Source of the DNA: Ylistrum balloti
Lineage: Eukaryota
Assembly (NCBI RefSeq): GCF_031769215.1
Contig: NW_026782404.1
Location: 186,001-250,000, forward strand
DNA length: 64,000 nucleotides
Reading direction: 5' to 3'
In this document: in pieces, positions 19,035 to 63,717 of the stretch
How the letters are laid out: each line of letters opens with the position of its first letter
Numbering within the stretch: the stretch's first letter is position 1
The notes under the pieces: generated by a model
Told to the model about the DNA's origin: nothing
Databases searched by the model: none
Seen by the model: only the letters and a program-made list of their open reading frames with translations
Made by a program: the position numbers and the translations under genes

Positions 19035-20437
19035 TCACTTTTTGTTTTTCTTCTTCCCAGATTTCTTTGGTGGTGGTTCACTTTGAGATTTTGCTTCTTT
19101 AGCCTTGACTTTCCTAGCCTCCCTAAAGGCCTTAATGTTTTCTTTGCCAATTAACCGATTGGCTTCCTCAAATATTTCTTTTTTGTATTTCTTCTCCATG
19201 CCATCAACTTTGACCATCAGTTCATAGGCCTTAAGGATTGATACACATCTATCCCGCTCATCTATCTTCTGACTTTCAAGTGTAGTGGACGGAAAGTCAG
19301 TTGGCCAAGTTTGTGGACAGAACTTCACCTTCTCAAAGTCTGTAATGTTACCCTCACCTGCTTCCACCATCAAATCATAAACTACCTGAATAAACATGTA
19401 GAAGATAGGTTACACCTGTATGGTCCAAAACCGTCTACTTATTGGTATTTAGTAAAAGTTAAGCATTGCTTCGAAATAAAGGTAAAAAAAGTGACTCCAA
19501 AAGGCAAAATATTTTAAAAGAACTACCAATTATGCTAAAGCTATTCTCAGACTAAAGGTAAAATTGTTCAATGCATTTTTGATATTGATGTTAATGACAA
19601 CTAGAAGTTGTTCTTATATTGATATATGATAACTTGTAAAAAAGAAGCTAGCAACACTGCAGTCCAGGAGCACTACATTAATTAAGACACAGTACACAAA
19701 CCTTTGTGTCATAGATGTTTGTACCATCAAGAAGAATCTCAAACTGTTTAAACAGGGTCTGAGAGGCATTGCCACAACCATGGAAAACCTGAAAAGATGG
19801 AGTGTGTTGATAATAAACATTTAATCTGAGTAAGCAACTTACTGGCAAATCAGTCAAATAATTCCCGTTTTTCAAGACATCTAAGGATAGTATCCATGAA
19901 ACATAAAATCATGTATATTTTTTGTAGTTTGTTTCGTTTAACTTATAGCTAAACCTTTGGTTTTTGTGAGTATAATGTATATGATTTCTGCAATTGTGCT
20001 GCAATTAAGTTTGATTTAATTTATAATCTGATATATGATGTAATTTAGAGTTACAATCAATTTACTTTTAAAATTTTTCAACTAAGTTGTAATAATTTCT
20101 GGAAAATTTTTATCATCAAATACCATTTGTGCATAAAGTTACAAGGCTACTATATATTTCCCTACCTTAGGGAATTCTTTAGAAGTGAGAAAATCATGTA
20201 GTTTGCCATCTGTTATCAAACTTTTATTCTCCCCAACACAAAACAGAAAACAGTCTTTCCTGTCCACACACAGAATGTGAGAAATGCTGCCTTCTTCCTC
20301 TCCCAATTTGTCTCCATAGCATGAAATGGCCACTGCTGACTTTGTTTCACAAATTCTTTCTACGGCACTTCTACTCTCAGGGCTGTCACTGATTTCTGTA
20401 ACCTCATACTCTATCAAGTGCAAAGAATCCATGTCAA
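19035..20437 (-). other. Egl/EXD1-like DEDDy 3'-5' exonuclease-fold domain, catalytically degenerate, encoded by TRPT1 exons 10-12
   Basis: AVAISCYGDKLG-x-GSISHILCVDRKDCFLFCV-x-ITDGKLHDFLTSKEFPKVFHGCGNASQTLFKQFEILLDGTNIYDTKVV parallels the remembered EXD1/Egl pattern IAVDCEGVNLG-x-G.LTLLQI-x-VYLFD-x-LK.LLES..I.KVIHDCR.DS.ALY.QFG-x-NVFDTQVA. Recognised by eye, not by HMM. Confidence 0.7.
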
Positions 20438-23400
20438 CTTTAAACATTAAGAACAAGGAAATATGACTGACAGAACAATATATGTCTTTCTCAGGTACAG
20501 AAGAACCTAACCATGTACTTAACAGCTGATTTATAAATTAACAATCACTTCCTCACTTTGTCACATGCAGTTGATAGACCAGAATAAACCTGCTTCATAA
20601 GTTTGTTAGAGTTTATCTGCACAACATTTCAGTACCTATACAGCAAATCACTGAGTGTAAAAACACAAGTTTCCTATTGAAAGGTATGAGAAAAATTCTG
20701 GATACTTAAGCACACATACTTTTAATCTCATACTGACAGGCTTATTCAAATATATTGGGCAAATGAATTCCTCTTGATTATCATATTACAAATGTATTAA
20801 ATCAAGGTTTCTTGGTTTTACACATGATATAGACAAAAGATTAAATAAGTCCTAAAGATACTAAACATACATGAATATTTCTATAGAAACATGTTTTTGT
20901 TTGTTACATTATATGCATGAAACAAAGATATCAAACCTTCCTCCACTTTGACTTCTGAGTTGGTCTCGGACCATTCGTCGTCCGAATAAGGAACAATTGG
21001 TTGACTTGGATTCTCATCAACTATGGGAGTATCAACTTTCTCTTTTTCTTCATGTAAATATTCTGTTGTATCTTCGGATGTGTCTTTTTTTTCAATAAAC
21101 ATGTCTGATATGTCAACATCTATCTCTGGTTGGTTTTCCTTCTTTTCTTTCTTCTCCTGACCTGTGTTTTTCTTCCCTTCCTCACTCTCATCCTCTCGCC
21201 CACGCTTTTTTGTTTTTTTATTCTTTTTCTTGCTTTTAGGAGCAGTTTCTTGAACATTTGTCTTGGTTATATTCTTGTCAAACTGCAGCATCCTTCCTGA
21301 TACAGAAAGAAGTGAAATATACATTGTTTATTCTGTGACGAAGCCTATAGATATTTGTATGAAGTTTGTTTCCTGGCATTTCAGAAAGACTATCCATTAA
21401 TTAATTAGTAATCAGAGAAATCACGCTGAGCACATATTATGTAGTTGAATTAATACAAACTTGATAGCAAATTTAATACAGATGACAAACTCTGCCATTG
21501 CGATACATGAACATCCATGTGTGTTATTCAAAAACATGATATACACCATGAGAATCCTGTATATAAAATTGTGAGATGGACAAACACGATGTAAGTTAAC
21601 AGTGGTAAACAATATTGTAGCTATTTCAATTTAATTTAATGTGGCTGATCATGCAATACTTACTTGGGTATCTTTGTACAACAGTATCAAAGTAAGCTGG
21701 GTAGATAATACCACGCTCATCTCCAGCCGACAGGATCACATTGTTGGCTGAACGGAAAAACTTGAGTCCATCTGTAAGATACAGAAATAAAGTTTAGCAA
21801 ATTTTGAATATGCATATTACAGTATATTGTATAACATACCAATATACAGATATAGATATATTAACACAGTGTGACAAGGCAAACATTCATTTTTCATTTT
21901 CATGTTTTGCTTTTGTTAGATTTGTGGGTACTCTTAATCAACAAAGTCATGTGTCTACTAGCTGTTAAAACTACTACAAGCAGATTTATTGACCTATATC
22001 TGTCCACGAAGTCAACTGTCAAGGAAATCGTAATTATGAAGAAGAGGCCTAGTGGCCTTGACAGTCACCTGAGATAAGCAATATTGAATATAAAGGTTAA
22101 AGGATAGTTATCAAGTGTCATGAAATAGAAATTGTGACCCTGAATATAGACAGTGTCAATACATGCATTCCATCAAAACTGTCATCCCATACTGATAATT
22201 TCTATAAAGTTATTTCCTGTGGGAAATAACCATTGTTATGCTCAAAAATACAATTTTTCTATGAAAATTACAGTAAAGTCTAAAAAACCCATTCCTCCTC
22301 ATTTTGGTCAATCTGAGTCAATTTGACCCCATTTGCCCTCTGGGGGATGGGGATTGTGTAATTCACAATTTAGGTTAATTTTAGGCCAGGGAAGGTTTCT
22401 GCAAAATTTCAATGAAATTGTATCAGGGGTTTTTGAGAAGAAGTCAAAAGTGTTAAATTGTTTACAGACACACAACACCACATGAAGGGTATTAGAATAG
22501 GTCACCATGAGACTTTGTCATACGTGACCTAAAAACCACAAAAACTAAGTTTGGCATCCTGTAATACAAGTGACTGTTTGTTTTTATTACATTATATTTG
22601 TGTCTTTTATTCGTGTTCATTCCCGTATGCATCGGTTACTTTCGATTTGTTAAATGTATATGTCTAGTAGGCCAGGAATAGGCATACTGTTGTAGGTTAC
22701 ATATTGTACATGTTGTGGACAATGACTGACCACTTGACCTGTGACATGCGCTGTTTAATTCTTTCTTCCTTATCCTACCTAAATTTTTCTTCCTTTTTTC
22801 ATTCTAATTTTTGGGCCTGAATCGAAAAGACATGTTTTTGATATTTCTCTTTACTCTCAAGTCCGTCGTGCCATACATAGAGATCTTTATGTTTCGTCTT
22901 TGAAAATATATATATGGAATGACTGTGTACTTCATCTGATTACATGTACAGCTAAATACCCTGTATAATATGGTATATATACTACATGGTATATCATTAC
23001 ATATCCCAAATCTCCATCTAATAATAGTTTTCTTATTAGTTTCAATTCCTGTACATACCAGCCAAGGCTTTCTTCATGTCCAACATTATAATCACCTCAC
23101 AGGAGGACCTCATCCCTGAAATAACATCATGCCAATAGATACAGATATTCATAAGCCTTAGTAATTGTGTCCAGATCTAGTCCTAGTCACATTATAAACA
23201 ATATTTGTCAATCCAGACAATATTGTAAAATTGGAAGAAATAAATGTGTGTATACTGAACCCAGTATTTATTTTGTGACTATACATGTATGATCATTTTT
23301 ACTCACCTGTTTTTATACATCCACCTATAGCTTTATCATTACAATTTATACTTTTATACATTTTACACTTGCAGCTATATATAATGCACAGCTAGTAAGT

Positions 23401-26400
23401 TTCCATTACATGGTGTCATATTTTAAAATGTTTTTCAGATTACAAGACAAAATTTTCAGCAAGTTATCATTTGTATATGTAGCTAATTAATCTATTTAAT
23501 TAAAAAAGATATTTAAACTTGCCCAAACTGCAAGTAATCATTAACATTAAGGTAATTTTGTGAAAAATTTGATATATTCATTGTTGAGAGAGTAATGAAA
23601 ACAGACAAAGCAAGAAAAATAATTTTCCACACTTCATATTTGTTATTAACTCTATAGTTCAATTTTTTCTAATATTTGAGGTTACCTGGCATACACTTTG
23701 AAATACTGTAAGTTACATGATGTACACCTTCCCAATTCTGCTGAATACCTCAGGTACAAATTGCAATAATTCTGGTGAAGTGTGGTACACTCTGTAATAT
23801 TTCTGATGACCTGATGGTCACCTAGTAATACATTTGGTTACCTGAGGTAAACATTGTAATACGTCTGACGACCTGATGGTCAATTAGTAATACTTTAGGT
23901 TACTTGGGGTAAACATAGTTATACTTCTGATGACCTGATGGTCACCTTGTTATACTTTTGGTTACCTGGGGTAAACATAGTTATACTTCATATGACCTAA
24001 TGTTCACCTTGTAATACTTTTGGTTACCTGAGGTACACATTGTTTTACTTCATATGACCTGATGTTTACCTTGTAATACTTTTGGTTACCTGGGGTAAAC
24101 ATAGTTATACTTCCGGTGACCTGATGGTCACCTTGTTATACTTTTGGGTACCTGGGGTAAACATAGTTATACTTCATATGACCTAATGTTCACCTTGTAA
24201 TACTTTTGGTTACCTGGGGTAAACATAGTTATATTTCATATGACCTGATGTTCACCTTGTAATACTTTTGGTTACCTGGGGTAAACATTGTTATACTTCA
24301 TATGACCTGATGGTCACCTTGTAATACTTTTGGTTACCTGAGGTAAACATTGTAATACTTCTGATGACCTGATGGTCACCTTGTAATACTTTTGGTTACC
24401 TGAGGTAAACATTGTTTTACTTCTGATGACCTGATGGTCACCTTGTAATACTTTTGGTTACCTGTGGTAAACATAGTAATACTTCTTATGACCTGATGGT
24501 CACCTTGTTATACTTTTGGTTACCTGAGGTAACCATTGTAATACTTCTGATGACCTGATGGTCACCTTGTAATACATACCACTAATAACTCCATTCTCGC
24601 CTGGTTCTCCTGCTGCAAAGTGAATGTGATTCCTTCCCATGCGACTCAGACCCTGCAAAACAATATCAATCAAAATAAAATGCTTACTTCATGTTATCAC
24701 TAGTACAGGATACATATTATTAACTTAGCCAGTTGTTATTACAACTGAAGTAAATGTGTGCAGTTTGGTCTGTTGATTCTATGCATTGGGTGATCATGCC
24801 TGTCATCCCATTTTCGAAAATCTGTCAAATGTTCTAAACCTATATCAGTATGCTTCCACTTCAATAATGTCAGGAATATTTTAGTGAATCTGCCTGTATC
24901 CAATTTTGGCATTTTCAGAGAGTATGATAAACAGGAAAGGTTACATTTTGTAAGAATGCAGAATCATTGGATGCATATCTTCAACAGTCAATACTTTTTA
25001 AGGGCAGACTCAAAATGACTGCAATTGATGATGGGCTTTAAAACAATCCAAAATAAAGTTGAGGCACAATGAATTTTGACTACATTAATGTCAGCTGGTC
25101 ATTCAGAGTAAAGGCTAGGCACTGTGACCTTCAGTCGTTACCATGAATTACAAGAGATCCCACAGGGACCTTGGCACCCACCATCCTTTGATCTTTATTT
25201 GTTCTTTGAAAGCTGGACCATTTCCTTTCTTTTCTCTTCTCTGTTTTTGCTCTTAATGATTAGAAATTTGAACATTCCTTTGCAGAAACAAAGATGATAA
25301 TCATTAACTACCAAATGCAAGATGGTCACGTGGAAGCCATTTTGTTTTTTTTTATCAGATTCAAAATCAAACTCTCACATATAGGGACAATGGGGAACCT
25401 ACAAATGAAATTTGAGAAAGATCAACCCAGTTTTTCTTAAGAAATAGCGATAACAAAATTTTTATACAGACAAACAGACCACAGACATATATGGCAATTT
25501 GGATACCATGGTAAACTACACTATAACCTCAGGTCATGGTTTATAGTAGGTTAGGGTTAAATCTTAGGCCATGGTATTAGCACTAGTGTCTGTAGTCAAT
25601 GATTACCGTTTTCTGTATGATTTCCCAGCTTTTCCAGTAAGTACCATGAATGACTTGGTCTACCTCGTTAGCACTGGTGATGGGTTTCAGGTCTAAATCA
25701 TCTACCTGAAAGTAAACAAACCTGTGTACATACCACTCTGGGGAGGACTACATTAGAGCTGAAAATCTAATTGTGATGATTATGGGTATAGTGCAGCCCT
25801 TTGACAGCTATTGATCACAGAAGCTATTAAAAGACAATTATAATTTGGATCAAAATGACAATAAAACGATCAAAAGATAATAATAAATGTGTCAATTATC
25901 CCACAAACAACAGTGATCTTTAAAACAGAAGTGACCTGAATAACTTCAAACAAAACTGATATGAAAGAAGGAAACAAGATCTTGCTTGCGAAAATAAATT
26001 ACAGTTCAAACTATCAGAGTTCGCATTACCAAAATCATGACATTATGTTTAAAATCATCTTAGCAAGGCAGGAAACTACTGCTCAGTAATAGCATTTTCT
26101 TTAAAACAATATGTCGATTATAAAATGATTTTCATTTTTCAAACTACTGCTCAGTAATAGCATTTTCTTTAAAACAATATGTCGATTATAAAATGATTTT
26201 CATTTGAAACACTTACTGCACTGCAATACATGTTAATACTGTTAAGATATCACAGGCTTCATTTAGTTCTTTATCACTTTGCAAAAGCCATATTAAATGT
26301 AGCCCGACATATGTCTGTTCTTGTATACACAGAAGTTAGCATTGACGAATCAGTAAGCAGTGTGAATTGAGACTTTACATGTCTTCAGGTTAGTGTTTGT

Positions 26401-29400
26401 TAAAATCAAATGCCTCTTACAACTATTTGGATAGTCTTGACATGACTATCTTATCAAAAAGTGAATTGAAACACTGTTGTTCTTTGACATTACACATGCC
26501 AATATCCTGTGGTCCATGTATTCTAATTGCTTGTAATACAGAGTTGAGGCCTGTAATTGTGTCAGAAGGCACAAGCATGGTGTTATGGCATGATGTGTAA
26601 GAAATCATACTAAATCAATGATAATTAAGTGACATGAATGTGGTTAATTTGATGGTATCAATTGCTTACAATTGTCATTTATAGCCTGTTAAGACCCACA
26701 GCAATCATTGTCCATGTGAATATTAGTGACCACATGGAGCGATTATTGTGACATCAACATCTTTATCCATACTTATATGTGCAGTGTCATGATATGTTTG
26801 AAAAATTTGAATTTTAAATGAAACAGACTAGAGAGGGTTCAAACTATCACTAGACAGAAAATAATTGTTTTTATCAAAAACATCATATGTTCTAAATTTC
26901 CCTGCCTATTCGAATTGACAAAAGGTTTGCCAAAATCACTTTCACGGCTGTCCACTACAAATCATGTACCAGTATTAGTTGCTCCTAACATGGATTAAAT
27001 TACTGGTACATTATTGTACCTGTAGGTACATTGCACATGTTCTGATACACATTAAGATACTGATATAACATCTATGGTGTGTCATAAAATCTATATTTCC
27101 TCTGTTGAAGATCTTAGGAACAATGCCAATAAGTTCTGAGATCTATGGGAGATAAGCTCTCTGGTGAGTGTAACCTTTGAGAAATTAACCTTTGATATAT
27201 TTCTACCTACCAGGCCAATCACACTGGAATATTGAGATTCATAGGGTATTATCTTTATGGTCAAAGATTCATATCAGTTTTACTGCCACAGTTTATTCTG
27301 TAGTCTCTCAGAGATTACCTCCATAGTGTGACCCTGATTGGCTCGTATCATCAATCGCTTGTTTTCTGGATTTCGCTTGAGAGCAAATCTCTGTTTGTCA
27401 TTGTTTGCAACAACTCGTTCAACATCATCAATTCGAAAATCTTGGAGGGAAGGAAGTTTTAAAACATCCTCTACAAAAAGGAAACCACCTGAAAAAACAA
27501 GTGTTAAGATACAAAGCTGAAGATATGTACCAGAGTTAATATTCACTAATTATGATTTCAATACAAATTGATTCTTTAAAAAAGTCTTCCATCATATTTT
27601 ATTTTTTCCAAAAATCTTTCATCATATATTTTTCTATATATATAAACCATTATATAGCATTGCTATGGTGTAACCTTACCAAAACCAGATGTGTATTACC
27701 AACTCATGAACTGCCGATGGCATATACATGTATATTGCATGAGAAAAAAAATTATGTTGCCTCCCCTTAAAATGGGATAAAATTGAAAATGATAAATATA
27801 GGCATTGAACTACCTTAAGTTGGCAATCATGGGCAACATTAAATACTTAAATACATATAGATAGACTCTTGATTCGTTCCATTAACACCCCTCTGAATCC
27901 AAATCATTATTACATTCTTAACGACCCATCAACACATAAAAGGTCATTAGGGCTGAATTGAAGGCAAAGGAGTTTAAGGGACTGTTTCTGAGATGAACTC
28001 AGTAGATTTGAATGCCAATTCTAATAATCAGTACCATATTTGATAAACTAGCTTTACTCAGATAATCCATGAAACTGGACAGGTAGTGCTTTTCAACTGC
28101 CAAATGTACAAGATTATATCAGATATATATAGGAAAACAAAGAAGAACACACGGTACTGATAAATAGCTTTTTGAAATACAAATTTATACTATCAAAGTA
28201 AAACATAACTATGGTATTACTGCCTCACAAATTTCAATACAGAAATATTCAAAATATGATCATCTGATGTTTGAGTTTGTAGCAAATAGCTCAAGAGACA
28301 ATGACACTACAAAAACAAAGGTGGGGTATAATAACGTTGCCTGCAGTTTTTGTTTTACTTTACACTGCAATTAGTACCTGGCATTAAGGTGAATCCCTCC
28401 TTCTCTGCTCCATGGCGCAGAAGAAATGATAGCTTCTTTGAGAGATGGAAATCAGAATTGGAATCCTATGAACAGAAAAATACCATACATGTAATGATGA
28501 CTTTTTCATCAATAAGAAGTACTAACATGGTAGACCTAATGTTGATTTTGTCAAACTGTTTCCATACCTTATGTTATTAACAAAGAAAGGACAAACATTT
28601 CACCAGTGATATATTGATTTAAGCTGACATGCAAGTTAAAAAAAATCCATGCTGAGATAAAAAAAAAAATAATATACATTTTTTAGAATGCTTTCGAGAC
28701 CTCCCCTATGCTAAAAATATATTCTTGTCATTGTATCTAAGGAAGTGGCAGACATTTTGGTTTAAGCCTTGCTTGGAAATGTGTACAGGCATCCCAGGGT
28801 ATAAAAGGCATGCAACCTGTTGAACCAGTTATCATAATTTCAATGTCAGCACAACGCCACTAAGACATACATTGCATGAGAACATTTACTCGCTCCTATT
28901 TTTTTTCATCCAAGTGACTGAATAACCTGGAAATGGATGTTGAACATGAATCTATTACAAACAGATACAATATTAGCCAAACAACTGAAGTACACATTTA
29001 TTTACATTACAATTTACACACCTTGAGCTGTGCATTTGGGAGGAAACAACACATGATATATCAACAAATGAACATCCACGATAAACCCTCCCTTGTTTTC
29101 CAGAGTGCAGACATAAATTCTTGCGTATTAAGCTTGACTACTTCCTATTATTTCTTCACAAAAAGAGTTCACTAGTAAAATTTCAGACAATCTACAACAG
29201 GTCACCACTTCACATGGGTTTTACTGGTCAAGCATTGTAACAGGGTCATAATTAATTAGTTATTATACTGATTGTCAAATATAATAAATAAAATATTTTA
29301 TATTTATTTGTCGTTTAGTACAATATACAGAATTTGTTGTTTTATACTTACTTGTATATTATCTGTAAAATTCGCGTTACGTTTTGCCTGTCAATGTATA

Positions 29401-32400
29401 GCAGTACGTATACTAGGTATAGCGTGAGTACGTTTCTTTTTTGGCGCTTTACATATGTATGTGTGCTGTACGTAAGTTGTGGTCAGCTACGGACTGGACT
29501 TGTTACACTTGACAAACTTTCACGAAGTTGCTAGATTGGTTGAAAGTTTCTGTCTTGTGGATTTCTTTTTCTGTCCTTAGTAATTCGGTATAGTTAATTT
29601 CTATCTCTCCGAGTGAATGGTTGGACTATTTTGTCAGTAACACTGTCCCTGTATATTTCAGGGTAAGTTTAATACTTTTTCTATTTCTAGTTTTTTCCCT
29701 AGTTTATCCCATCTGTTTGAATGAGTAATTGTGTAAGTGAAATATTAACAAATTATTTTAAAAGTGTAACTGCACAGTATATTGTGATCAGTATTTCATT
29801 TAATGTATATATATTTCTTGAAACGTTACGTTCTGTGATTATGTTGTATTTGAATATTGTAAGTAAGAATATGTATTGTATTCATTGTAGCATTTGCACC
29901 TGCTACTGTGATGTCAACCCCTCAACTAAATTATGTGGTATCATCTGTGTTGTGGCGTGTAACAATAATGCACGTAACATGTTGTAAGTGAACTTTTATA
30001 TATTTAATGTAATTGAATTATTTCATTGTAATGAATACTAATATATCTGTAAAGTTAAATGTGTATTGTGATACTGTTTTCACTTATTTGTTAAAGTTGT
30101 GATTTGTTGAAGATTAAATTGTCAGTAGATGTCAGATGTGTGTGAGAGTCTGATTTTGTTTTATCCTATATGTTACAGAATGTCTCTGTTTTAATAAATG
30201 TAAAACATCGAACCCAGCAGCTTTGTTATGACCATTCTGCTACAAATGGTGCCCATGTAGGGACCAAATTCTGATTGAGGGTCCGGACACAAGAGGGTTT
30301 ATACGCCTATGGACAAGATCATCAGAACCAAATTCCGCCACAACATTTTAACCCCAGGTACATCTGCCGGAAGACACCACTAACGGATGTTGTTGACAGC
30401 CACACATGTGTTTACCATTAGGCCTATAGGCTTCCATGGACAAGATTCTCCACTAGTGCTGTTTACCTGGAATTTTGACCTATGCTGAAGATGGATGATA
30501 AATTGTGACACTCCTGCAATGATGTGAATTATTTATGTTACCTTTCGTCTTTTCTATTTGGAGTTTTATGTTGTCACTTGTTTATTTTGTGCTATTTGAT
30601 CTATTTGTGATGTGCAATTCTGATGTGACTGTGAGTATGGAGGCCTTATTGTGCCTCTCTCCATCTGTTTCCCTGTTTCAGTAAGTATTGAGTATGGAGG
30701 CCTTATTGTGCCTCTGCCCATCTGTTTCCCTGTTTCAGTAAGTATTGAGTATGGAGGCCTTATTGTACCTCTGCCCATCTGTTTCCCTGTTTCAGTAAGT
30801 ATTGAGTATGGAGGCCTTATTGTGCCTCTGCCCATCTGTTTCCCTGTTTCAGTAAGTATTGAATATGGAGGCCTTATTGTGTCTCTTACCATATGTTTCC
30901 CTGTTTCAGTAAGTATTGAGTACGGAGGCCTTATTGTGCCTCTGCCCATCTGTTTCCCTGTTTCAGTAAGTATTGAGTACGGATTTCCCTGTTTCAGTAA
31001 GTATTGAGTATGGAGGCCTTATTGTGCCTCTGCCCATCTGTTTCCCTGTTTCAGTAAGTATTGAGTATGGAGGCCTTATTGTGCCTCTGCCCATCTGTTT
31101 CCCTGTTTCAGTAAGTATTGAGTATGGAGGCCTTATTGTGCCTCTGCCCATCTGTTTCCCTGTTTCAGTAAGTATCTGTTTCCCTGTTTCAGAGTATGGA
31201 GGCCTTATTGTGCCTCTGCCCATCTGTTTCCCTGTTTCAGTAAGTATTGAGTATGGAGGCCTTATTGTGCCTCTGCCCATCTGTTTCCCTGTTTCAGTAA
31301 GTATTGAGTATGGAGGCCTTATTGTGCCTCTGCCCATCTGTTTCCCTGTTTCAGTAAGTATTATTCCTATTCCTTTGGTTTATTTGGTCAATTTTGCAGT
31401 GTGTCTTTATTGGCTTGTTTTTATTTGCTGGTAGTTGAGGTACTGACCAAGACATAAGCTGACATTGCACTAACATGTCATATCCTGAGTGGGTTTGATC
31501 TTTATTGTTTGTGTGCTGAACTTTTGCGCTTGCGGTTCACTGCTTGATGCTTCACAGAGTTGATATAGATTACTTAACTTTTACTTAGTATTAATTGTGC
31601 AGCTATACATACCGTTACATTTTGGTTTGTTTTGTTTCTTAAGCTTCTGGACTTCGAAAATTTCTTTTCAGGCATTGTGTGCTTAACCATGTTGGAAATT
31701 ACTTTTATTTCAGCTTTTGTATTTCTATAATCAAAATTACTTGTGAATTTTTCACTTGGACATTGACTTGTATTCAAACTTAGTGTTGTTGTACTTTGTT
31801 TTTCAGCTACCTGTATTTTGTGCATTTTTGTAATTTTGCAGATAATTTGTGGACTTTTTGAAATGTTTTAATCCTTACCATTTGGATTTGCTTATTATTT
31901 GTGTGTCTTGACAACATCCCTCACTCTTGGACTCGGATATATGCGATGGACTACATGGACAGATGGGCTGTGTTCTTTAGTTCTATCACATTTTTAAAAT
32001 ATATTTTTGGATAGCTGAGAAGTATTGATCATCATCACGCAACTTTGAAGTCATCAAGTGAGTGCACTCTTTTTTTTTTGGTCATCCGTACTTTTAATCA
32101 TATAATATACAGGTGAGTTTCACTTCGGGCAGTCAATGTTGAAAGGTTGATAACTGGTTTGACAGGTCGTAGGCCTTTTATACCCTGGGATGCCTGTACT
32201 CGTTTCCAAGCAAGGCTTGGACTAAAATGTTGATCACCTCCTTAGATACACTGACCCAAAGATATTGATATCATAGGGGGCATTTTGGGAGTATTTGGGA
32301 AAGGGAAATTTTTGTTATCTCAAAATTAATTCTATTTAATTTGCATTGTCAGCTTTAACAAGCAAGGACTTTCTGTGTGTACTCATAATGAGCATAAGGT

Positions 32401-35017
32401 GTATACAGTACATACCAACCAACATTGGTGTCTATGATAATTGTGTACCTACCCTGTGTCTTCCTCCTCCACTGCCCTGACTACTGTTAGAATAGTAGCT
32501 CCTTTGACTCTGATCGCAATAAAACTGTCTGCTGTCTGTAAACATCATTGGATTAGGAGGTCCTGTGGGTCCATAACAATCTCTCTTCATCCCTCGACCA
32601 TATGGAGATTTATTTCTGGTTTTTGGACTGGGATTTCTGTGTCCTGATGTTGGACGTCCGAAATTGGCTCCCTGACTAGCATTGTGTGACCTTCCTCTTT
32701 CCTGAGGAGGAAGAGGATCATGGAAGTCTTCATTTGGACCACTGTTGTATTGCTGTCCGCTATTTGAATGACTTCGAATTTCATTTCCGGAACAGTAGAA
32801 TTCACCTCTTCTTCTTCTTCCTCCTCCAGGCCCATATTGAACATTGCCTTGATGTCCAGGTTCCCTACTGCAGCCATTATGAGGCAGCGGATTGGAGAAA
32901 AAAAAACATTATTGAACAATACATGCATCAATCTTTTCGAAAGGATACCAAATAAGCAAGCTTTTGAAAAGCTTTGTTATTGTAATATTTAGTTCCCTTC
33001 CAGACTACAATCTATATTAGAGTATAATACTTTTTACCTCTTGCACCAAAGTACAGAGGAAAAGTACCAGCTTGTCCAGTTGTCCATCTGTCTTCTGACT
33101 TAAACTTTTTCAATAATGCATTTGCTCATATGTCCAACGAAAAAATCTTAAAGGTTGTAATTGCTACTTTTGTACATGTTGTACCTTCTCAAAAATTGTT
33201 TGAATTTTGACCATAATTTTATGCAAGGTTATAACTGTTACAGGGTATAATCTGTATATGCTGCTATTTACTAATAGCTTATTACATATACAAAAATGTA
33301 TATACATAAGGGGGTTTATTAATGGTTATATGTATTTGGTTTTGCATTAATGTACAGTGTACGTATATATGGATGTATCATATGTTTTAGTGTTATGTAT
33401 TATGTCATGTCAAGTATGCATATTTTGACACCTCACTGTGGACTGACCACTTGTGTAGGTCGTGACCTTAGACAAGACTTGCTTTTCACTTGTAACCAGA
33501 CCCGGGCACTTCCACCCGAGATACACGCAGCAACGGTTTATATTACATTTATATTACACCTACGTCCCAAAGGGAATTTATAGGAAACCTCTGCATCACA
33601 GTTGTAGGGTAAATGTCTGTTGTATATAACTAATTCTAGTTATTTAGTAATTAGTTTCAAATTTTCTGTTTAATTATATATTTTACTATGCAGTTACGTT
33701 CTGTAGCCCATGTAGCCGGTTATTAATGAAATAAACTACTAGTTTGTATTGTTTTAGTCTGGTAAAGTTTAGTTGTTCAGAACTCTAATGTATAACATTT
33801 ATTCAACATTTCTAATTATGTAATTTGCACTATTTCGTAGCTTAACGTAAGTCTGTCATAGAGTTATTTCCCTTGTTTAAACATGGTCAGGTCTATAGTA
33901 TATATATGTATGTGTCAGAGAGTGAGAGTTTATTGTCTTTTTTCGTTTTACATTGCAGGGTTTTGTTTCTATTATTTAAGAAGGGGCAATCAAAATGCCG
34001 TGAGAACCCACCCAATGATCCTTGTGTTTCTTAGCTATAAACCAAGGACTGTAACATGACAACTGTGGACTTTGCATTTGACCAAGACTTACATAATCCA
34101 TCTCTAATATAATGAATGTTGTGTATTTACATGACAAATGATATTTGAATAGGGCACAATATATTAGATCATAAAATCCACAGTAATCTGTCTAAAACCA
34201 GATCTTTCATTTCACTCTGATACTCTACCTTCCTATGTTCCTTACACAGAAATGTAGAGTATCTGAGTGGACTGATCTGGTTTCAATCAGATTGTCATCA
34301 GCAGTTAATAATCATCTGTGCTAAGTTTGGTTCTTATGTCACAATAATTTTTGAAGTTGGCTTTCACAATTATTGTGGTATATTAACATAATGAATTAAA
34401 AACCAAGTAGAAACTACTGAGGTTGTTTTTAAACAACAAAATCTAAACCAGATTACAATGAGTTTTGATAGGTATTAATTGAGCTAATTAATTCAATAAT
34501 TGCTTATATTGTTTTGAATCAAAATTGTTAAGTGCAGTGTGTTCGGATGTGGTTTATAAACACCCATGGTTACTTTCAGTGCCACTATTGTGCACTTGCA
34601 TTTTATCTCCAAAAATAATGTTTTTCCATCAGTTTGAAATAAAGCCGTATTCATGACATTTGAAAAATCGACGTCATGACTGTATAGCTATAAATAACTA
34701 CAATTTTGACAGCTATAACTCAACACTGGTCTGACCTGGCATTATAAGTATATGATATTGGATTCCATTCTAAGGAAAGTTCATAAAAACAAAATATTAT
34801 AGAAGACACCATATGTGAACATAATAAATTCATCAAATGAATTAGATACCACTAATAAAAAGTAAATTATGCATGGGCGTGTGATAGCAGTGGTATGGAA
34901 TATTAACCGGACGAAATAGTGACCAGTAGCCAAGATTAACAAAGATTGTATTCAACAGTTTGCAATCCCGTAATTATATATTCCTTACCTTTGATGGTTA
35001 CGTTGATAATACGCCAT
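19035..35017 (-). CDS. TRPT1: tRNA 2'-phosphotransferase 1 with an N-terminal low-complexity region and a C-terminal inactive EXD1/Egalitarian-like exonuclease domain (~702 aa, 12 coding exons)
   Basis: Phase-consistent GT-AG exons: 35017-34989, 32867-32453, 28465-28378, 27488-27319, 25705-25607, 24652-24580, 23115-23059, 21771-21664, 21296-20937, 20437-20166, 19788-19702 and 19385-19035 (2109 nt in total, no internal stop). Tpt1 motifs: LSKKLSFLLRHGA, NDKQRF, IRANQGH, IHGT, GLSRMGRNHIHF, GMRSSCEV and DGLKFFRSANNVIL. Exon 1 is the least certain. Confidence 0.88.
22042..22535 (+). mobile_element. pearl/HINE-like non-autonomous element in TRPT1 intron 7
   Basis: Starts aagaggcctagtggcc...gtcacctgag, has an internal core with tttgacccc and tgtaattcacaattt, and ends in a terminal hairpin ggtcac...gtgacc followed by taaaaa. 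Confidence 0.6.
23750..24575 (+). repeat. 62-bp higher-order tandem array (2 x 31 bp, ~13 copies) starting 4 nt into TRPT1 intron 6
   Basis: Alternating gtaatacttttggttacctgaggtaaacatt and gtaatacttctgatgacctgatggtcacctt; period 62 (24304, 24366, 24428). Confidence 0.92.
25300..25545 (+). mobile_element. Fragment of the same pearl/HINE-like dispersed repeat family
   Basis: caagatggtcacgtggaagccattttg...tagggac...caaatgaaatttgagaaagatc resembles the element at 8480-8942; acagacaaacagac is microsatellite-like. Confidence 0.4.
26073..26204 (+). repeat. 68-bp perfect tandem duplication
   Basis: aaactactgctcagtaatagcattttctttaaaacaatatgtcgattataaaatgattttcatt occurs at 26073 and 26141. Confidence 0.9.
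29236..30264 (+). mobile_element. LTR (~1.0 kb) plus primer-binding site of a truncated LTR retroelement, probably Gypsy-like
   Basis: TGTAACA at 29236, aataaa at ~30192 and end tgcTACA at 30244. After 2 nt comes TGGTGCCCATGTAGGGAC (30247-30264), resembling tRNA-Lys-type PBS sequences. No gag/pol ORF or second LTR was found. Confidence 0.6.
30633..31363 (+). repeat. 57-bp tandem array (~12.5 copies, two internal partial units)
   Basis: Unit tattgagtatggaggccttattgtgcctctgcccatctgtttccctgtttcagtaag, period 57 (30661 and 30718). Confidence 0.95.
33236..34056 (+). mobile_element. Probable solo LTR (821 bp) in TRPT1 intron 1, inserted into a HINE-like repeat
   Basis: Inverted termini TGTTACA...TGTAACA; flanks taac/tgac give a 3/4 match to a 4-bp TSD. 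A gaaccca motif lies near the end, as in the LTR at 29236. The left flank has a HINE-like start tttttacctcttgc...agaggaaaag. Confidence 0.5.
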
Positions 35018-35769: not shown

Positions 35770-36850
35770 TTGGTCGCGCAAGACAGGATCAGGTAGAATC
35801 GGTCGCTTTATATGTAGAATTTGGGCGTTAAATTGTTTTTAGTGTAATTATTGTGGTGTTAAATAATTTCAGTTAAAATATGACAGATTCCTATTAATTA
35901 AAAACGGCAAAAACATCGGATTTTTTTCGCAGAACGTAATGTGCCGCACAGGACCGAAAGACGATTTACAGGATCGGGCAGAATCGGCCGGTTTATAGGA
36001 AGAATTTGGACATTAAATTGTATTTTAGTGTAATTATTGTTGTGTTTAATAATTTCAGTTAAAATATGATGTTTCCTATTGATAAAAAACGGCCAAAACA
36101 TCGTATTTTTTTCGCAGAACATAATGTTCCGCACAGGACAGAAAGACGATTTACAGGATCGGGCAAAATCGGTCGATTTATATGAAGAATTTGGGCATTA
36201 AATTGTATTTTAGTGTAATTATTGTGGTGTTTAATAATTTCAGTTAAAATATGATGTTTCCTATTGATAAAAAACGGCCAAAACATCGGGTTTTTTTCGC
36301 AGAACGTAGTGTGCCGCACAGGACCGAAAGGCGATTTACATGATCGGGCAAAATCGGTCGGTTTATATGTAGAATTTGGGCATTAAATTGTCTTTTGTGT
36401 AATTAGTGTTGTGTTAAATGGTCTCAGTTAAAATATGATAGTTTCATATTGATTAAAAACGGCCCAAATATCGTAGTTTTTCGCAGAACGTAATGTGCCG
36501 CACAGGACCGAAAAACGATTTACAGGATCGGGCAGAATCGGCCGGTTTATATGAAGAATTTTGGCATTAAATTTGTTTTTTTTTTTTTTTTTTTGTAATT
36601 ATTGTTGTGTAAATTGGTCTTAGTTAAAATATGACAGTTTAACATTGATAAAAAACGGCCAAAATATCATATTTTTTCGCAGAACGTAATGTGCCGCACA
36701 GGACCGAATGACAATTTACTGGATCGGGCAAAATCGGCCAGTTTATAGGAAGAATTTGGGCATTAACTTGTTTTTTTTTGTGTGAAATTATTGTGGTGTT
36801 AAATGGTCTTGGTTAAAATATTTAAGTTTCATATTGATAAAAAATGCCAC
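35770..36850 (+). repeat. ~185-bp satellite-like tandem array (~5.5 copies)
   Basis: gtgccgcacaggacc recurs at 35941, ~36126, 36311, 36495 and 36691. Upstream, at 35585-35596, is a perfect palindrome ctaaccggttag. Confidence 0.9.
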
Positions 36851-37149: not shown

Positions 37150-39184
37150 AGTATGTTAATGAGTAGATAGCGTAACTTGAGAGCTATTGTAATGAGGCAT
37201 ACTGTGAAATAAAATTTTCAGCTGTATGACACTAGTGTACTGAGTGTACTTAGAATGTATGACCTTTTTAAATGAGACTTAAAAATGTACTCCCTACTTG
37301 TTCTCTCTATACGTCTTATGTCATCTTTACTAAACATTTGCAAGAATGGGTGCTGTCATCAGAAGCTGTGTTGATAAAAAAGGCTACCGGCTTGATAGTC
37401 TGAAATCTTGTAATGGTTGATTGTCTGATACTGGTTAGAGATGGGCATTCTGCCAAAAAGTGCTGACGTGTCTCTGGAGCTGTCCTACAAAGCTTACACG
37501 TAGGGTCGACTTCATATTGGTTGAATTTGGCCCTGTTGCTCCAAAGTGTATAAGTTCCCAGTAAGAGTTTTGCCTTTACTTCTGCTCTTTGGATATCGTA
37601 TGAGCTACTTGAGATGTCATCGTATAAATGATGGACTCTTCCGACCTTGAGTGTTTCAGCATTGACATATTTTAGTGAAGGTTTCGTCTTTCTGTGTTCT
37701 GTCCATTCTTCTTCTACTTTGTTATTTATGGCGGTGTTTATCATCTTTTTCCAAACAGTTTTTGGTGGTAACTCTTTCAACAAGTCAAAGGCAGTTGGTA
37801 AATCATACTTAAGTAGTATTCTTCTGACAGATGCGAAGAAGCTGGAGGAACTTAACTTCTGTAGAGCTAGCTGTCGTGTGGCGATCTCGTATTCAGTACT
37901 GTCCTTTCTGTGTGCTATGTTGTAGAATAGGTTAAGAGTATTCTTGTGTATTACTGATTCGAGGGTCGGGATTCCTAGAAGTGCTAGGGCTATCGAGCTT
38001 GGCGTTCTATATGGAAGGTGTTGGATCTGTCTAAGAGTTTTTCTTTGAAATACTTCTAGAGTGTTGATATCTTAAGATGCCAGGTGGTGGATCTCTAAGC
38101 CATATAGAAGTCTTGGGGTTACATAGGTATTCCAAAGGTTAGCCTTAATTTCCTGTGTAACTCCACTTTTCCCATGGAAACCAGCACCCATTAACGAATA
38201 GGCAGTTCGTCGTCCTAACTGTATCCTTTTTGTTGTGTCCGGGCGGATGTTGATATTGTTCCTGATTATCCCAAGATGTTAATTTTCTTCAGCTATCTCT
38301 ATCTCCTTATTGTATATCTTGAGTTTAACATCTGATTGTTGTACATTGTAGAGCAGTACCTTGTTTTTTGTGGGGTTGATGTTGTATATTGAGCGTTTCG
38401 TGAATACTTCTACGTAGTCTAGCATACTCTACATCGCAGCTTCACTATGTGTCAGGAGGGCAGTGTCATCGGCACTGGTTGTGTGGGGGATGTGTATGGA
38501 TCCTATAGTGGCACCGTTGAATTTCTCAAGATCCATTAGTAGGGTGTTGTTGTACCTCTTGTAGTGTGACGTAGAGACTATCCCGCCCTGTCTAACTCCC
38601 TGTAATATTGGGAAGCTGTCTGATACTTCTCCCTGCCACTTTATTCTGGTAGTTGCTCCACTGTACATGTCTTTGACAATGTTCCAGATTGGAGATTCCA
38701 TCTAAGTAGAGTTGAATTACGTGGTCTACACGTCAAAAGCCTTCTGTACGTCTAGCGTTACAAAGTATAATGGCTTCTTATCCTGGCTGCTTCAGTGATA
38801 CATTCGGACATCATAAGTGCTGAGTTCAGAGAGGAAATTCCTTTGGTGAAACCTGCTTGTAATCGGGAAATGTGTCTTATCCAGAATAGTGGAGTGTCGG
38901 TTCTGTAGAATGTGTTCAATGATCTTCAGAAGGATAGGGGTTATAGTGATTCCTCTGAAGTTTGAAGGTAGCTGTATGTCGCCTTTCTTAAATACAGGTG
39001 TAAGTTGCCTTTCTTTTAAAGAGTTCGGGATTTTCTTCCTGGCAAAAATTCCAGCAATGATGTTCTTTAGACTGTTTAGAATGACATTTTCCCCAAACTT
39101 GATGTGTTCAGCAGTGATACCTTTGATGTCTGCAGCTTTGTTGTTGTTTAACTTTCTTATGGCTTGTAGTAGTTCACCATCTGT
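37150..39184 (-). mobile_element. Decayed non-LTR retrotransposon ORF2 (RT plus C-terminal Zn knuckle), RTEX/Proto2-like
   Basis: KAADIKGITAEHIK, QGVRQGGIVSTSHYKRY, HTTSADDTALL and CKLCRTAPETRQHFLAECPSL, with stops and frameshifts. The endonuclease region is absent. Clade assignment is tentative. Confidence 0.85.
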
Positions 39185-40329
39185 GGGTCTGCGTTTGGAG
39201 GTTGCTTCACTCCTCGGCGTGGAGTTTTGCCCTCCTCCCTCGGCTTCGGGTCTTCCAGAGAGGACTTCTACTTTAAGTGCCTTTCTTCCCTCAGACCCTG
39301 AGGTTAGGGCATCAGGTAGGTCATTGGCGGAGGGTACTATGGTTTCCTCAGCATTGGCTCAGATTCAGAAGGTTCTTCAAGCCAAATGTTCTGCTAATAG
39401 GAAGCAGGATCTTTCCGGTTTGCTTTTAGGGGTGAATGATATTGAGGGGTTCAGTCCTTCTCGATATGCAGTTCACGACCCCTCAATAGAATCTAATCCA
39501 GCCAAGGTGGACCTCCTTTTGGACCACTGCTGGCCTGGAAGATCAAATGACATGATTCATTTGTCTCCCAAAGAGCATAGTCGGATGGAAAGACTGCTTC
39601 GCCTTGCCATTCACGTGCTGGCTTATGCAGATTCTTTTTCCTCTGCTTTGTTTGTAGCTTCTTCTCGTTCGGAGGAGAGTCTATCTGACAGCAAGGCTAT
39701 GAACCGGGCCCACATGGATGGGACTGCGCTCATTCTGGCCGTTTTGACGGATTTCATCCTGGCTTGTCTTGCTTCAGTCTTGAAGCCAAGACTAGCTATT
39801 GGAGAGCCTTTTATATCGGATCTCATGACTGCTCCCCTGTCAGGCTCTGAAATGCTCGGAGGGGTTCTCTCCTCTGTCATGGACAGAGTCAACAATGACA
39901 AGTCGGCTTCAGCTCGGTTGGAGAAACTTAGGCTAAGCCTAAGCCTGGACGGGTGCAGCGCCCAGGCAAACCTAAGAAGGGCCCTAAGACGGCTCAGCAT
40001 CAGGCTCAGTCGTCTGTTACCTCGACTTCTCGAGGGGGGCACTCTTCTCGGGGATGGGGTGGTCGGGGTCACAAGGGAGGAAGGGGGAGGCAAGCAGAAT
40101 GCAGGTAAGAAGGGGCAGAGTTCCTGACTCTTTCAGTCCCTCGGTTCCTCCCTGCCCCTTGCCCTGTCGTATAGACGATCCAAGGGGAAGGTCTCCAGCT
40201 CCCAAGGCCAGATATTCCCGTTGGGGGTCGCCTTTCTCATTTTCTGCCGGATTGGCAGCAGCTTACCGAGGACAAGTGGGCAATTTCGGTGGTGTCCGAG
40301 GGTCTGGGTATCCCTCTTCTAAAGGATCC

Positions 40330-56216: not shown

Positions 56217-63717
<7,501 letters not shown>

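What the first reader, a model, noticed from the sequence alone, without database searches (positions are those of the whole stretch)
19035..35017. TRPT1 fused to a catalytically dead Egalitarian/EXD1-like exonuclease domain: candidate undescribed RNA-end-modifying reader-writer protein
Seen: twelve phase-matched exons give a ~702-aa ORF. The Tpt1 domain keeps the Arg-His-Arg-Arg catalytic set (LLRHG, KQRF, RANQGH) and the NAD+-binding HGT and RNHIHF motifs, so it looks active. A Lys-rich/acidic linker (exon 9) follows. After it comes a DEDDy-exonuclease-like domain whose ExoI DxE reads SCY and whose ExoII HDxxxD reads HGCGNA; ExoIII appears lost. The basic tail PPPKKSGKKKNKK looks like an NLS. 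Established: human TRPT1 is a ~250-aa single-domain enzyme that removes RNA 2'-phosphates using NAD+, and Tpt1 enzymes can also ADP-ribosylate 5'-phosphorylated nucleic-acid ends. Inactive exonuclease domains in EXD1 (piRNA pathway) and Egalitarian act as RNA- or protein-binding modules. Inference: the fusion may steer 2'-phosphotransferase or ADP-ribose capping activity to particular RNAs (piRNA/germ granule, transported mRNA or viral RNA) beyond tRNA splicing. I do not know of a description of this architecture in animals, but novelty is unverified.
Basis: partly seen in the sequence, partly recalled or inferred. Interest (0 to 1): 0.85.

Follow-up and report, generated by a model that had tools for sequence, protein, structure and literature searches.

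The report
Scallop TRPT1 carrying dead exonuclease domain
This scallop gene really does encode an RNA 2'-phosphotransferase (TRPT1) joined in one protein to an inactivated Egalitarian/EXD1-type exonuclease fold; the arrangement is conserved across molluscs, sits in databases only as an "uncharacterized protein", and may be a clue to what TRPT1 does in animals.

Summary
On the minus strand, 35017..19035, twelve GT-AG exons join into one open frame of 702 aa. With the exon-10 acceptor that the orthologues support (20410), it is 693 aa. That product matches RefSeq "uncharacterized protein LOC132557400" of Ylistrum balloti.

- **Tpt1 domain.** Exons 3-8 give a full-length Tpt1/KptA domain (PF01885, 208 bits, 2e-54 to human TRPT1). 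The yeast catalytic tetrad is conserved.
- **C-terminal domain.** Exons 10-12 have no Pfam hit. A profile of 32 mollusc sequences hits Egalitarian (8e-14) and EXD1 (3e-9). A confident AlphaFold model superposes on the Egalitarian exonuclease-homology domain (Z 21, 2.8 A, 186 residues). The DEDDy catalytic positions are substituted in all 32 mollusc sequences.
- **One transcript.** No RNA reads exist for this species. Intronless contigs from related scallops carry both domains in a single ORF.
- **Distribution.** The fusion occurs in bivalves, a chiton and a cuttlefish. Gastropods have short TRPT1.
- **Parallel case.** Protists independently fuse Tpt1 to an intact ERI1-like exonuclease.

Function is inferred. 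I read the dead exonuclease fold as a non-catalytic targeting module for an active Tpt1. I found no paper describing this architecture. It is a new variant of a known enzyme, of moderate to high interest.

The parts
34989..35017 (-). Exon 1: start codon at 35017, MAYYQRNHQ, donor AG|gtaagg
   Evidence: The N-terminus MA(Y)YQ.. is shared with the orthologues P0001 and P0007-P0009.
32453..32867 (-). Exon 2: basic, Gly/Ser/Arg-rich, low-complexity N-terminal region (pI 10.0) with RG/GRG motifs
   Evidence: Only 30-36% identical among scallops.
28378..28465 (-). Exon 3: start of the Tpt1 domain, with LSKKLSFLLRHG (catalytic Arg-His)
   Evidence: Pfam PF01885 positions 2-27. Aligned to yeast R23/H24.
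27319..27488 (-). Exon 4: Tpt1, with NDKQRF (catalytic Arg, yeast R71) and IRANQGH
   Evidence: PF01885 positions 27-90, E 7.6e-15.
25607..25705 (-). Exon 5: Tpt1, HGT motif
   Evidence: PF01885 positions 85-119.
24580..24652 (-). Exon 6: Tpt1, GRNHIHF (catalytic Arg, yeast R138)
   Evidence: PF01885 positions 114-146.
23059..23115 (-). Exon 7: Tpt1, MRSSCEVIIMLDMKKALA
   Evidence: PF01885 positions 137-160.
21664..21771 (-). Exon 8: end of the Tpt1 domain (DGLKFFRSANNVIL...), strong donor CAA|gtaagt. It has no in-frame stop. Read-through into intron 8 stops after 12 codons.
20937..21296 (-). Exon 9: Lys-rich then acidic disordered linker (KSKKKNKKTKKRGRE..., pI 5.0)
   Evidence: The sequence runs unbroken across the 8>9 junction in the transcripts of relatives.
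20166..20437 (-). Exon 10: first part of the exonuclease-homology domain, with the degenerate ExoI motif (ISCYG). The acceptor is 20437 (reader) or 20410 (RefSeq and orthologues).
   Evidence: The mollusc C-domain HMM gives 1.6e-25 on this ORF.
19702..19788 (-). Exon 11: degenerate ExoII motif (KVFHGCGNAS) and the IYDTK motif
   Evidence: HMM 1.1e-14.
19035..19385 (-). Exon 12: remainder of the exonuclease fold (ExoIII lost), a C-terminal helix, the Lys-rich tail GKKKNKK and the stop codon (19037-19035)
   Evidence: HMM 8.5e-32.

Best explanation
**Shown.** This is the scallop (Ylistrum balloti) TRPT1 gene. It encodes one 693-702-aa protein with five parts:
- a basic RG/Ser-rich disordered N-terminus;
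- a complete Tpt1 domain (NAD+-dependent RNA 2'-phosphotransferase / 5'-phosphate ADP-ribosyltransferase) that looks catalytically competent;
- a Lys-rich then acidic linker;
- a well-folded DEDDy/RNase D-type exonuclease-homology domain, nearest to those of Egalitarian and EXD1, in which the metal-binding catalytic residues are replaced;
- a Lys-rich tail.

The architecture is old. It is found in bivalves, a chiton and a cuttlefish.

**Inferred.** The dead exonuclease fold does not cut RNA. I propose that it serves as a targeting module, as the homologous domains do in Egalitarian (binds RNA stem-loops) and EXD1 (piRNA-complex adaptor). It would hold a particular structured RNA, RNA end or RNP so that the tethered Tpt1 domain can remove a 2'-phosphate or ADP-ribosylate a 5'-phosphate there. 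The Lys-rich linker and tail would add nuclear targeting or non-specific RNA affinity.
For: **Gene model.**. It is 98.7% identical to RefSeq P0006; the only difference is one acceptor.

**Tpt1 domain.** PF01885 positions 2-177 at 208 bits. E 2e-54 to human TRPT1 (7yw3). The tetrad aligns with yeast R23/H24/R71/R138. 32 of the 38 proteins that carry the C-domain keep all five Tpt1 motifs.

**Exonuclease-homology domain.**
- Profile against PDB: Egl 7.8e-14 and 4.5e-13, EXD1 3e-9.
- AlphaFold model: pLDDT 86.9, pTM 0.82.
- Foldseek: the top 8 hits are all Egl, down to 2e-11.
- VIA-align: Z 21.0, rmsd 2.8 A over 186 residues, to Egl 525-747.
- Catalytic positions are degenerate in all 32 mollusc sequences.

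**One mRNA.** Contigs L001 and L002 (3.1-3.3 kb) carry uninterrupted ORFs of 741 and 731 aa spanning both domains. They read straight across all four predicted junctions.

**Conservation.** Among scallops the exonuclease-homology domain is 57-66% identical, against 30-36% for the N-terminal region.

**Precedents.** The Egl exonuclease-homology domain binds stem-loop RNA without needing its catalytic residues (PMC13186709; bioRxiv 10.1101/2025.08.03.668247).

**Independent pairing.** Protists fuse Tpt1 to an intact ERI1-like DEDDh exonuclease.
Against: - There is no RNA evidence from this species. The only run that holds the locus is genomic DNA.
- The exonuclease-homology core is acidic (pI 4.9, net charge about -11).
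- The Egl residues that contact RNA (K657, K659, R686, R687) fall in loops that are shorter or different in the mollusc domain (alignment). RNA binding by the core is therefore not supported by sequence.
- Egl's other RNA-binding parts (LOTUS-like domains, XAD) are absent.
- A Tpt1-only short isoform cannot be excluded. Read-through of intron 8 reaches a stop after 12 codons, and an ATTAAA lies at 21640.
- No activity was measured.
Confidence: 0.5

Rival explanations
1. The exonuclease-homology domain is a protein-protein module and not an RNA reader. It would drive dimerisation or dock onto another factor, as the EXD1 exonuclease-like domain does in the PIWI-EXD1-Tdrd12 complex. In this reading it controls the assembly, localisation or regulation of TRPT1.
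For: - The core is strongly acidic (pI 4.9).
- The Egl RNA-contact residues are not conserved.
- EXD1 is the second-best sequence relative (3e-9; Z 16.5).
- The GRG/RG motifs in the N-terminus resemble the Tudor-binding methyl-arginine sites of germline proteins. This last point rests on my own knowledge.
Against: - The nearest relative by every measure is Egl, whose domain binds RNA directly.
- No partner is known.
- The Lsm domain that accompanies EXD1 is absent.
Confidence: 0.3
2. The C-terminal domain is a decaying remnant of a once-active exonuclease fusion. It no longer contributes to function, and the protein works as plain TRPT1.
For: - All catalytic residues are lost.
- Gastropods manage with a short TRPT1. 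The Haliotis locus has no exonuclease exon within 10 kb downstream.
Against: - The domain is kept in three molluscan classes.
- It is predicted to fold with high confidence.
- It is about twice as conserved among scallops as the disordered N-terminus.
- It has no frameshifts or stops in 30 or more species.
Confidence: 0.07
3. The fusion is a reading or annotation artefact. Under this view a TRPT1 gene and a separate EXD1/Egl-like gene lie head to tail on one strand and were merged.
For: - There are no RNA reads for this species.
- Contig L003 from a more distant organism has a stop and a frame change between the Tpt1 ORF and the exonuclease ORF.
Against: - Exon 8 has no stop and has a consensus donor.
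- Exon 9 is a 120-codon open linker in phase on both sides.
- The intronless contigs L001 and L002 carry one ORF over both domains.
- The same order is predicted in more than 30 molluscs.
- The break in L003 lies in a repetitive linker on a single contig, so it may be an assembly error.
Confidence: 0.03

Closest known systems
Human/mouse TRPT1 and yeast Tpt1 (PDB 7yw3, 7yw2, 7yw4)
   Same: The Tpt1/KptA domain is complete. It is about 50% identical to human TRPT1 over 193 residues, with E 2e-54. The catalytic Arg-His-Arg-Arg tetrad and the HGT and RxHIH motifs are conserved.
   Different: The known enzymes are single-domain proteins of 230-253 aa. This one adds a 150-aa basic disordered N-terminus, a 135-aa charged linker and a 190-aa exonuclease fold with a Lys-rich tail.
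Drosophila Egalitarian exonuclease-homology domain (PDB 9rvy-9rwb, 9uju)
   Same: It is the best hit by profile (7.8e-14) and by structure (Z 21.0, 2.8 A, 186 residues). In Egl this domain works as an RNA-binding module that does not need its catalytic residues.
   Different: - Egl keeps all five DEDDy residues; the mollusc domain has lost them.
- Egl's LOTUS-like domains, XAD helices and dynein-light-chain motif are absent.
- The Egl RNA-contact lysines and arginines are not conserved.
- The partner domain here is an enzyme (Tpt1), not a BicD-binding adaptor.
EXD1 (Bombyx Exd1, PDB 5fiq/5fis)
   Same: It is the second-best relative (3e-9; Z 16.5). It is also a DEDDy fold that has lost its catalytic residues and serves as a non-catalytic adaptor.
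   Different: EXD1 is a stand-alone protein with an Lsm-like N-terminal domain and acts in the piRNA PET complex. Here there is no Lsm domain, and the fold is fused to Tpt1.
Protist Tpt1-RNase_T fusions (e.g. Ectocarpus P0100, P0071)
   Same: The domain order is the same, with Tpt1 at the N-terminus and a DEDD-superfamily exonuclease fold at the C-terminus.
   Different: The exonuclease is a different family (PF00929, ERI1-like DEDDh). It has intact DFEATC, EIIEFP, GDWD and HSGIDD motifs, so it is probably active. It is an independent fusion, not homologous in its linker or tail.

Membership tests
Tpt1/KptA RNA 2'-phosphotransferase (PF01885) | Full-length match to the family profile above the curated cut-off | tested here: met
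   P0006 (the product of this gene) scores 208.3 bits against a cut-off of 26 and covers profile positions 2-177 of 177. The window exons tile the profile in order.
Tpt1/KptA RNA 2'-phosphotransferase (PF01885) | Catalytic tetrad Arg-His-Arg-Arg (yeast R23, H24, R71, R138) | tested here: met
   The phmmer alignment to yeast Tpt1 (7yw4) places LLRH, KQRF and GRNHIHF on R23/H24, R71 and R138.
Tpt1/KptA RNA 2'-phosphotransferase (PF01885) | NAD+-dependent removal of an RNA 2'-phosphate | not testable with these tools
   This needs an enzyme assay or complementation of yeast tpt1 deletion.
DEDDy 3'-5' exonuclease fold (RNase D / PF01612 superfamily) | The alpha/beta RNase D-type fold | tested here: met
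   The AlphaFold model has pLDDT 86.9. VIA-align gives Z 21.0 to Egl, 18.7 to E. coli RNase D and 17 to RRP6. 129 Foldseek hits have E <= 1e-3.
DEDDy 3'-5' exonuclease fold (RNase D / PF01612 superfamily) | Match to Pfam PF01612 | tested here: not met
   There is no PF01612 hit for the exons or for any of the five full-length scallop proteins, even at E <= 0.1-1.
DEDDy 3'-5' exonuclease fold (RNase D / PF01612 superfamily) | The five catalytic residues Asp, Glu, Asp, Tyr, Asp | tested here: not met
   ExoI D-x-E reads S-C-Y and the ExoII Asp is Ala (alignment to Egl D561, E563, D621). No mollusc sequence in A1 has the full set. ExoIII Tyr and Asp appear to be Glu and Cys by my hand alignment, which is less certain.
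Egalitarian / EXD1-like non-catalytic exonuclease-homology domains | Closest significant sequence and structure relatives are Egl and EXD1 | tested here: met
   Egl scores 7.8e-14 and EXD1 3e-9. The next family scores 0.03. The top 8 Foldseek hits and the top 6 VIA-align hits are Egl.
Egalitarian orthologues | N-terminal LOTUS-like (WHD_Egal) domains, an XAD after the exonuclease-homology domain, and a dynein-light-chain motif | tested here: not met
   There is no WHD_Egal or other Pfam hit. The structural alignment ends at Egl residue 747-752 and does not extend into the XAD. This gene is not an Egl orthologue.
EXD1 orthologues | Lsm-like N-terminal domain; membership of the PIWI-Tdrd12 complex | not tested
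   No Lsm-type Pfam hit was seen, but no dedicated test was done. The region before the domain is a charged, low-complexity linker. Complex membership needs experiments.

The most novel reading that the evidence does not exclude
The pairing of Tpt1 with a DEDD exonuclease fold may be a Rosetta-stone link that has arisen at least twice. In molluscs the partner is a dead Egl/EXD1-type DEDDy fold. In protists it is a live ERI1-type DEDDh enzyme. This would point to an unrecognised pathway in which Tpt1 acts on RNA ends or stem-loops together with a module that recognises or trims 3' ends. That pathway could be the missing physiological role of TRPT1 in animals.

A sharper version concerns origin. 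The mollusc domain may be the Egalitarian exonuclease-homology domain itself, relocated to TRPT1 in a lineage whose Egl-like proteins lack it (PMC12579938).
Probability: 0.15. Interest if true: 0.8.

Novelty: new variant of a known kind. Interest (0 to 1): 0.6.

Why it matters
TRPT1 is conserved throughout animals, yet its job there is unknown. To my knowledge, animal tRNA splicing does not need it and knockout mice are viable. Its in-vitro ability to cap 5'-phosphate RNA ends with ADP-ribose has no established target.

A conserved natural fusion is one of the few sequence-level clues to partners and substrates. Here an active-looking Tpt1 has been tethered, since early in mollusc evolution, to a fold that in Egalitarian recognises RNA stem-loops and in EXD1 recruits small-RNA machinery. 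Protists independently tether Tpt1 to a live ERI1-type exonuclease.

This makes a concrete hypothesis testable: Tpt1 chemistry is aimed at specific RNA ends or hairpins. It also adds a third animal example of an exonuclease fold reused as a non-catalytic module. Pfam does not detect this domain, so the architecture is invisible in standard annotation.

Tried and rejected
1. **Transcript evidence from this species.** The only public run that holds the locus (X1) covers introns evenly and shows no splice joints, so it is genomic DNA. I had no RNA evidence for Y. balloti.
2. **Pfam on single exons and full-length proteins.** Nothing was found for the C-terminal part.
3. **Single-sequence searches with exon 10.** The PDB search gave only E = 1.7 to Egl. 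The exhaustive representative search gave 5 hits. A profile of 32 sequences was needed.
4. **XAD-like module after the fold.** The structural alignments stop at model residue about 202-207, so I do not claim an XAD.
5. **Conservation of Egl RNA-contact residues.** K657, K659, R686 and R687 are not conserved.
6. **A hidden exonuclease-homology exon downstream of a gastropod TRPT1.** None lies within 10 kb in Haliotis rufescens, while the same procedure found all three exons in the window.
7. **A short canonical TRPT1 in scallops.** None appeared among the 120 best short Tpt1 proteins. This is not proof of absence. An earlier scan note mentions a divergent Tpt1-like gene elsewhere in this genome, which I could not check.
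8. **Origin of the domain (Egl, EXD1 or the mollusc 451-aa PF01612 family).** I did not attempt the tree.
9. **Octopus, Owenia, Saccoglossus and Mnemiopsis long Tpt1 proteins.** None has a detectable exonuclease-homology domain with the iterated HMM.


Full report
**What is in the window.** The window is AT-rich animal DNA with about 33% GC. On the minus strand between 35017 and 19035 I rebuilt twelve exons from stop-to-stop open frames and their splice signals. They are 35017-34989, 32867-32453, 28465-28378, 27488-27319, 25705-25607, 24652-24580, 23115-23059, 21771-21664, 21296-20937, 20437-20166, 19788-19702 and 19385-19035. Every intron is GT...AG, and the exons join in phase to 2109 nt, or 702 aa, with one terminal stop. 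The stop-codon frequency on this strand is 0.075, so a 120-codon open stretch has P about 9e-5. Exons 9, 10 and 12 each sit in open stretches of 124-148 codons.

**Identity of the gene.** An exhaustive search with exon 10 found a 738-aa protein of Mizuhopecten yessoensis with the match at residues 499-583. A word-indexed search then returned Ylistrum balloti 'uncharacterized protein LOC132557400' (P0006, 693 aa). It also returned Pecten maximus LOC117323459 and two proteins from Logan assemblies. My model is 98.7% identical to P0006. The only difference is nine residues at the start of exon 10. RefSeq and all four orthologues use an AG 27 nt downstream, at 20410.

**Are both domains on one transcript?** The only public run that holds this DNA (X1) covers exons and introns alike and shows no splice joints. 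It is genomic, so I have no RNA evidence for this species. Indirect evidence is strong. Logan contigs L001 (3147 nt) and L002 (3251 nt) carry uninterrupted ORFs of 741 and 731 aa with flanking untranslated sequence. In scallop genomes the same coding sequence is split into twelve exons over 16 kb, so these contigs are spliced mRNA. Their proteins read without any gap across each junction predicted here: RYP|R, VEE|EYE, FPK|VF and DTK|VVY. A genomic contig from another organism (L006) has the last Tpt1 exon and the exon-10 equivalent 4.5 kb apart on one strand. One contig (L003) has a stop and a frame change between the two parts. The break lies inside a repetitive linker on a single contig, so I treat it as a likely assembly error but list it as counter-evidence. 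A Tpt1-only isoform cannot be excluded. Reading through the exon-8 donor gives a stop after 12 codons, and an ATTAAA lies at 21640.

**The Tpt1 half.** Six exons tile Pfam PTS_2-RNA positions 2-177 in order. The whole protein scores 208 bits against a cut-off of 26. The domain matches human TRPT1 (7yw3) at 2e-54 and yeast Tpt1 (7yw4) at 1e-30. In the yeast alignment, LLRH, KQRF and GRNHIHF fall on R23/H24, R71 and R138, which by my recollection of the yeast mutational work are the essential tetrad. That motif is conserved too, but it is not R138. Of the 38 proteins that carry the C-terminal domain, 32 keep all five Tpt1 motifs.

**The C-terminal half.** Pfam finds nothing here, even in full-length proteins. 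A single exon gave only E = 1.7 to Egalitarian. I collected the homologous region from 38 mollusc proteins by iterated HMM search and aligned 32 of them as A1.
- **Profile search.** Against all PDB sequences the profile hit Egalitarian at 7.8e-14 and 4.5e-13 and EXD1 at 3e-9. The next family scored 0.03 (T. brucei RNase D, then the Werner syndrome WRN exonuclease and RRP6).
- **Structure.** AlphaFold2 on A1 gave pLDDT 86.9 and pTM 0.82. The eight best Foldseek hits are all Egalitarian chains from the 2026 Egl-BicD-RNA cryo-EM structures, down to 2e-11. VIA-align gives Z 21.0, rmsd 2.8 A over 186 residues, to Egl 525-747. E. coli RNase D scores 18.7, RRP6 about 17 and EXD1 16.5. ESM Atlas searches agree.
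- **Catalytic residues.** In the HMM alignment, Egl D561-C-E563-G aligns with scallop S-C-Y-G, and the D621 of Egl H616-D-C-R-N-D621 aligns with Ala in H-G-C-G-N-A. By hand alignment the ExoIII Tyr and Asp are Glu and Cys. No mollusc sequence in A1 has the full set. Mytilus keeps only the ExoI Glu.

The domain is thus a DEDDy fold that cannot bind the two metals in the usual way.

**Corrections to the precedents.** The structural alignment stops at about model residue 205 and does not reach Egl's XAD. LOTUS-like domains are absent. According to the K10-complex preprint, Egl itself retains all five DEDDy residues. So 'dead' applies to EXD1 but not to Egl.

**Distribution.** Long Tpt1 proteins with this C-terminal domain occur in the following groups:
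- scallops;
- mussels (Mytilus spp.);
- oysters (Crassostrea/Magallana, Ostrea, Saccostrea);
- Solemya;
- unionids (Potamilus, Sinanodonta);
- Dreissena and Mya;
- the chiton Liolophura (P0055);
- the cuttlefish Acanthosepion (P0061).

Gastropods, Lingula, a nemertean, cnidarians, sponges and chordates have short TRPT1 of 200-300 aa. The Haliotis rufescens TRPT1 locus has no exonuclease-homology exon within 10 kb downstream, although the same procedure finds all three exons in the window. Haliotis TRPT1 does end in a Lys-rich tail. No short scallop TRPT1 appeared among the 120 best short hits. The fusion is therefore probably the scallop TRPT1 orthologue. An earlier scan note reports a divergent Tpt1-like gene elsewhere in this genome, which I could not check.

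**A parallel in protists.** The same search showed many Tpt1 proteins with a C-terminal PF00929 (RNase_T) domain, among them Ectocarpus and Heterosigma. Their exonuclease keeps DFEATC, EIIEFP, GDWD and HSGIDD, an intact ERI1-like DEDDh set. Tpt1 has thus been joined to a DEDD-superfamily fold at least twice, once with a live enzyme and once with a dead one.

**How it most likely works.** The shown facts are an active-looking Tpt1, a folded and conserved but catalytically degenerate exonuclease-homology domain, and basic disordered ends. The mechanism is inferred. In Egl the homologous domain grips stem-loop RNA with surfaces outside or around the vestigial active site, and the catalytic residues are dispensable. 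In EXD1 the dead domain is an adaptor in a small-RNA complex (cited). I therefore propose that the mollusc domain positions Tpt1 on particular RNAs or RNPs.

Several points weigh against direct RNA binding by the core. It is acidic (pI 4.9). The Egl contact residues are not conserved. Egl's helper domains are missing. A protein-docking or dimerisation role is therefore a serious rival, which I put at 0.3. The domain is 57-66% identical among scallops, against 30-36% for the N-terminal region, and it persists in three molluscan classes. That argues against a functionless relic.

**An open lead.** A 2025 paper reports that Egl-like proteins of planarians, molluscs, annelids and brachiopods have a short conserved central region where Drosophila Egl has its exonuclease-like domain (PMC12579938). 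An unchecked scan note says the same of this genome's Egl-like gene. Whether the Egl-type domain on mollusc TRPT1 is that missing domain relocated, an EXD1 derivative or another paralogue needs a tree that I could not build.

**Novelty.** The gene model is public but named 'uncharacterized protein'. UniProt calls the orthologues '2'-phosphotransferase', and only PF01885 is recorded. Full-text searches found no paper that links Tpt1/TRPT1 with EXD1, Egalitarian, an exonuclease fusion or bivalves. A survey of NAD+/ADP-ribose systems mentions only a KptA-Nudix fusion and viral KptA. I rate this a new variant of a known kind. The enzyme and the fold are both known. Their conserved union and the hidden identity of the C-terminal domain appear undescribed.

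Noticed in passing
P0071, P0100 and about 15 others: Many protist proteins (Ectocarpus, Heterosigma and unnamed metagenomic ones) fuse Tpt1 at the N-terminus to an ERI1-like RNase_T exonuclease. The DEDDh motifs DFEATC, EIIEFP, GDWD and HSGIDD are intact. This is an independent Tpt1-exonuclease fusion.
   Followed up: partly
P0053, P0059 (Mytilus), P0115 (Mya): These are extra paralogues that keep the exonuclease-homology domain but lack some Tpt1 catalytic motifs. They may be copies with a degenerate enzyme half, or poor gene models.
   Followed up: no
L007:22616-22768: Haliotis rufescens TRPT1 is short (267 aa) and has no exonuclease-homology exon within 10 kb downstream. It nevertheless ends in an acidic stretch plus the Lys-rich tail KQRRKKKKHKK, which resembles the extreme C-terminus of the fusion proteins.
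   Followed up: partly
L003:700-900: On this 1785-nt contig from an unidentified organism, the Tpt1 ORF and the exonuclease-domain ORF (P0005) are separated by a TAG and a frame change inside a repetitive linker. This is either an assembly error or a real split.
   Followed up: partly
window 23793-24575: A 62-bp tandem repeat of 12.6 copies at 90% match fills the start of intron 6. It begins five bases from the exon-6 donor at 24580.
   Followed up: no
window 30632-31362: A 57-bp minisatellite of about 12 copies lies in intron 2. It is open in frames on both strands (for example GRGTIRPPYSILTETGKQM repeated), and so mimics long ORFs.
   Followed up: no
window 22052-22840: This segment of intron 7 is a very high-copy repeat. 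The summed contig depth in run X1 reaches about 8,290, against about 9 in the flanks, with many internal joints.
   Followed up: no
window 35783-36500: A 185-bp tandem repeat of 3.9 copies begins about 770 bp upstream of the start codon, in the presumed promoter region.
   Followed up: no
window 11741-12748 (+): A single long ORF encodes an AIG1/GIMAP-type GTPase (PF04548, 2.3e-56).
   Followed up: partly
window 2514-3776 (-) and 60510-63813 (-): BEACH-domain coding sequence lies at both ends of the window. The 2514-3776 ORF also has a weak protein-kinase-like stretch before the BEACH domain (PF02138 2.6e-36; PF00069 1.4e-6, below cut-off).
   Followed up: partly
window 37319-42819: A GC-rich block (up to 51% GC) holds retroelement remnants. 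There is a zf-RVT/LINE-like ORF on the minus strand and an RT plus RNase H ORF on the plus strand.
   Followed up: partly
window 20410-20437: Two candidate acceptors for exon 10 lie 27 nt apart. The upstream one has the better pyrimidine tract. The downstream one is used by RefSeq and fits all orthologues. Alternative use would add or remove nine residues just before the exonuclease fold.
   Followed up: partly
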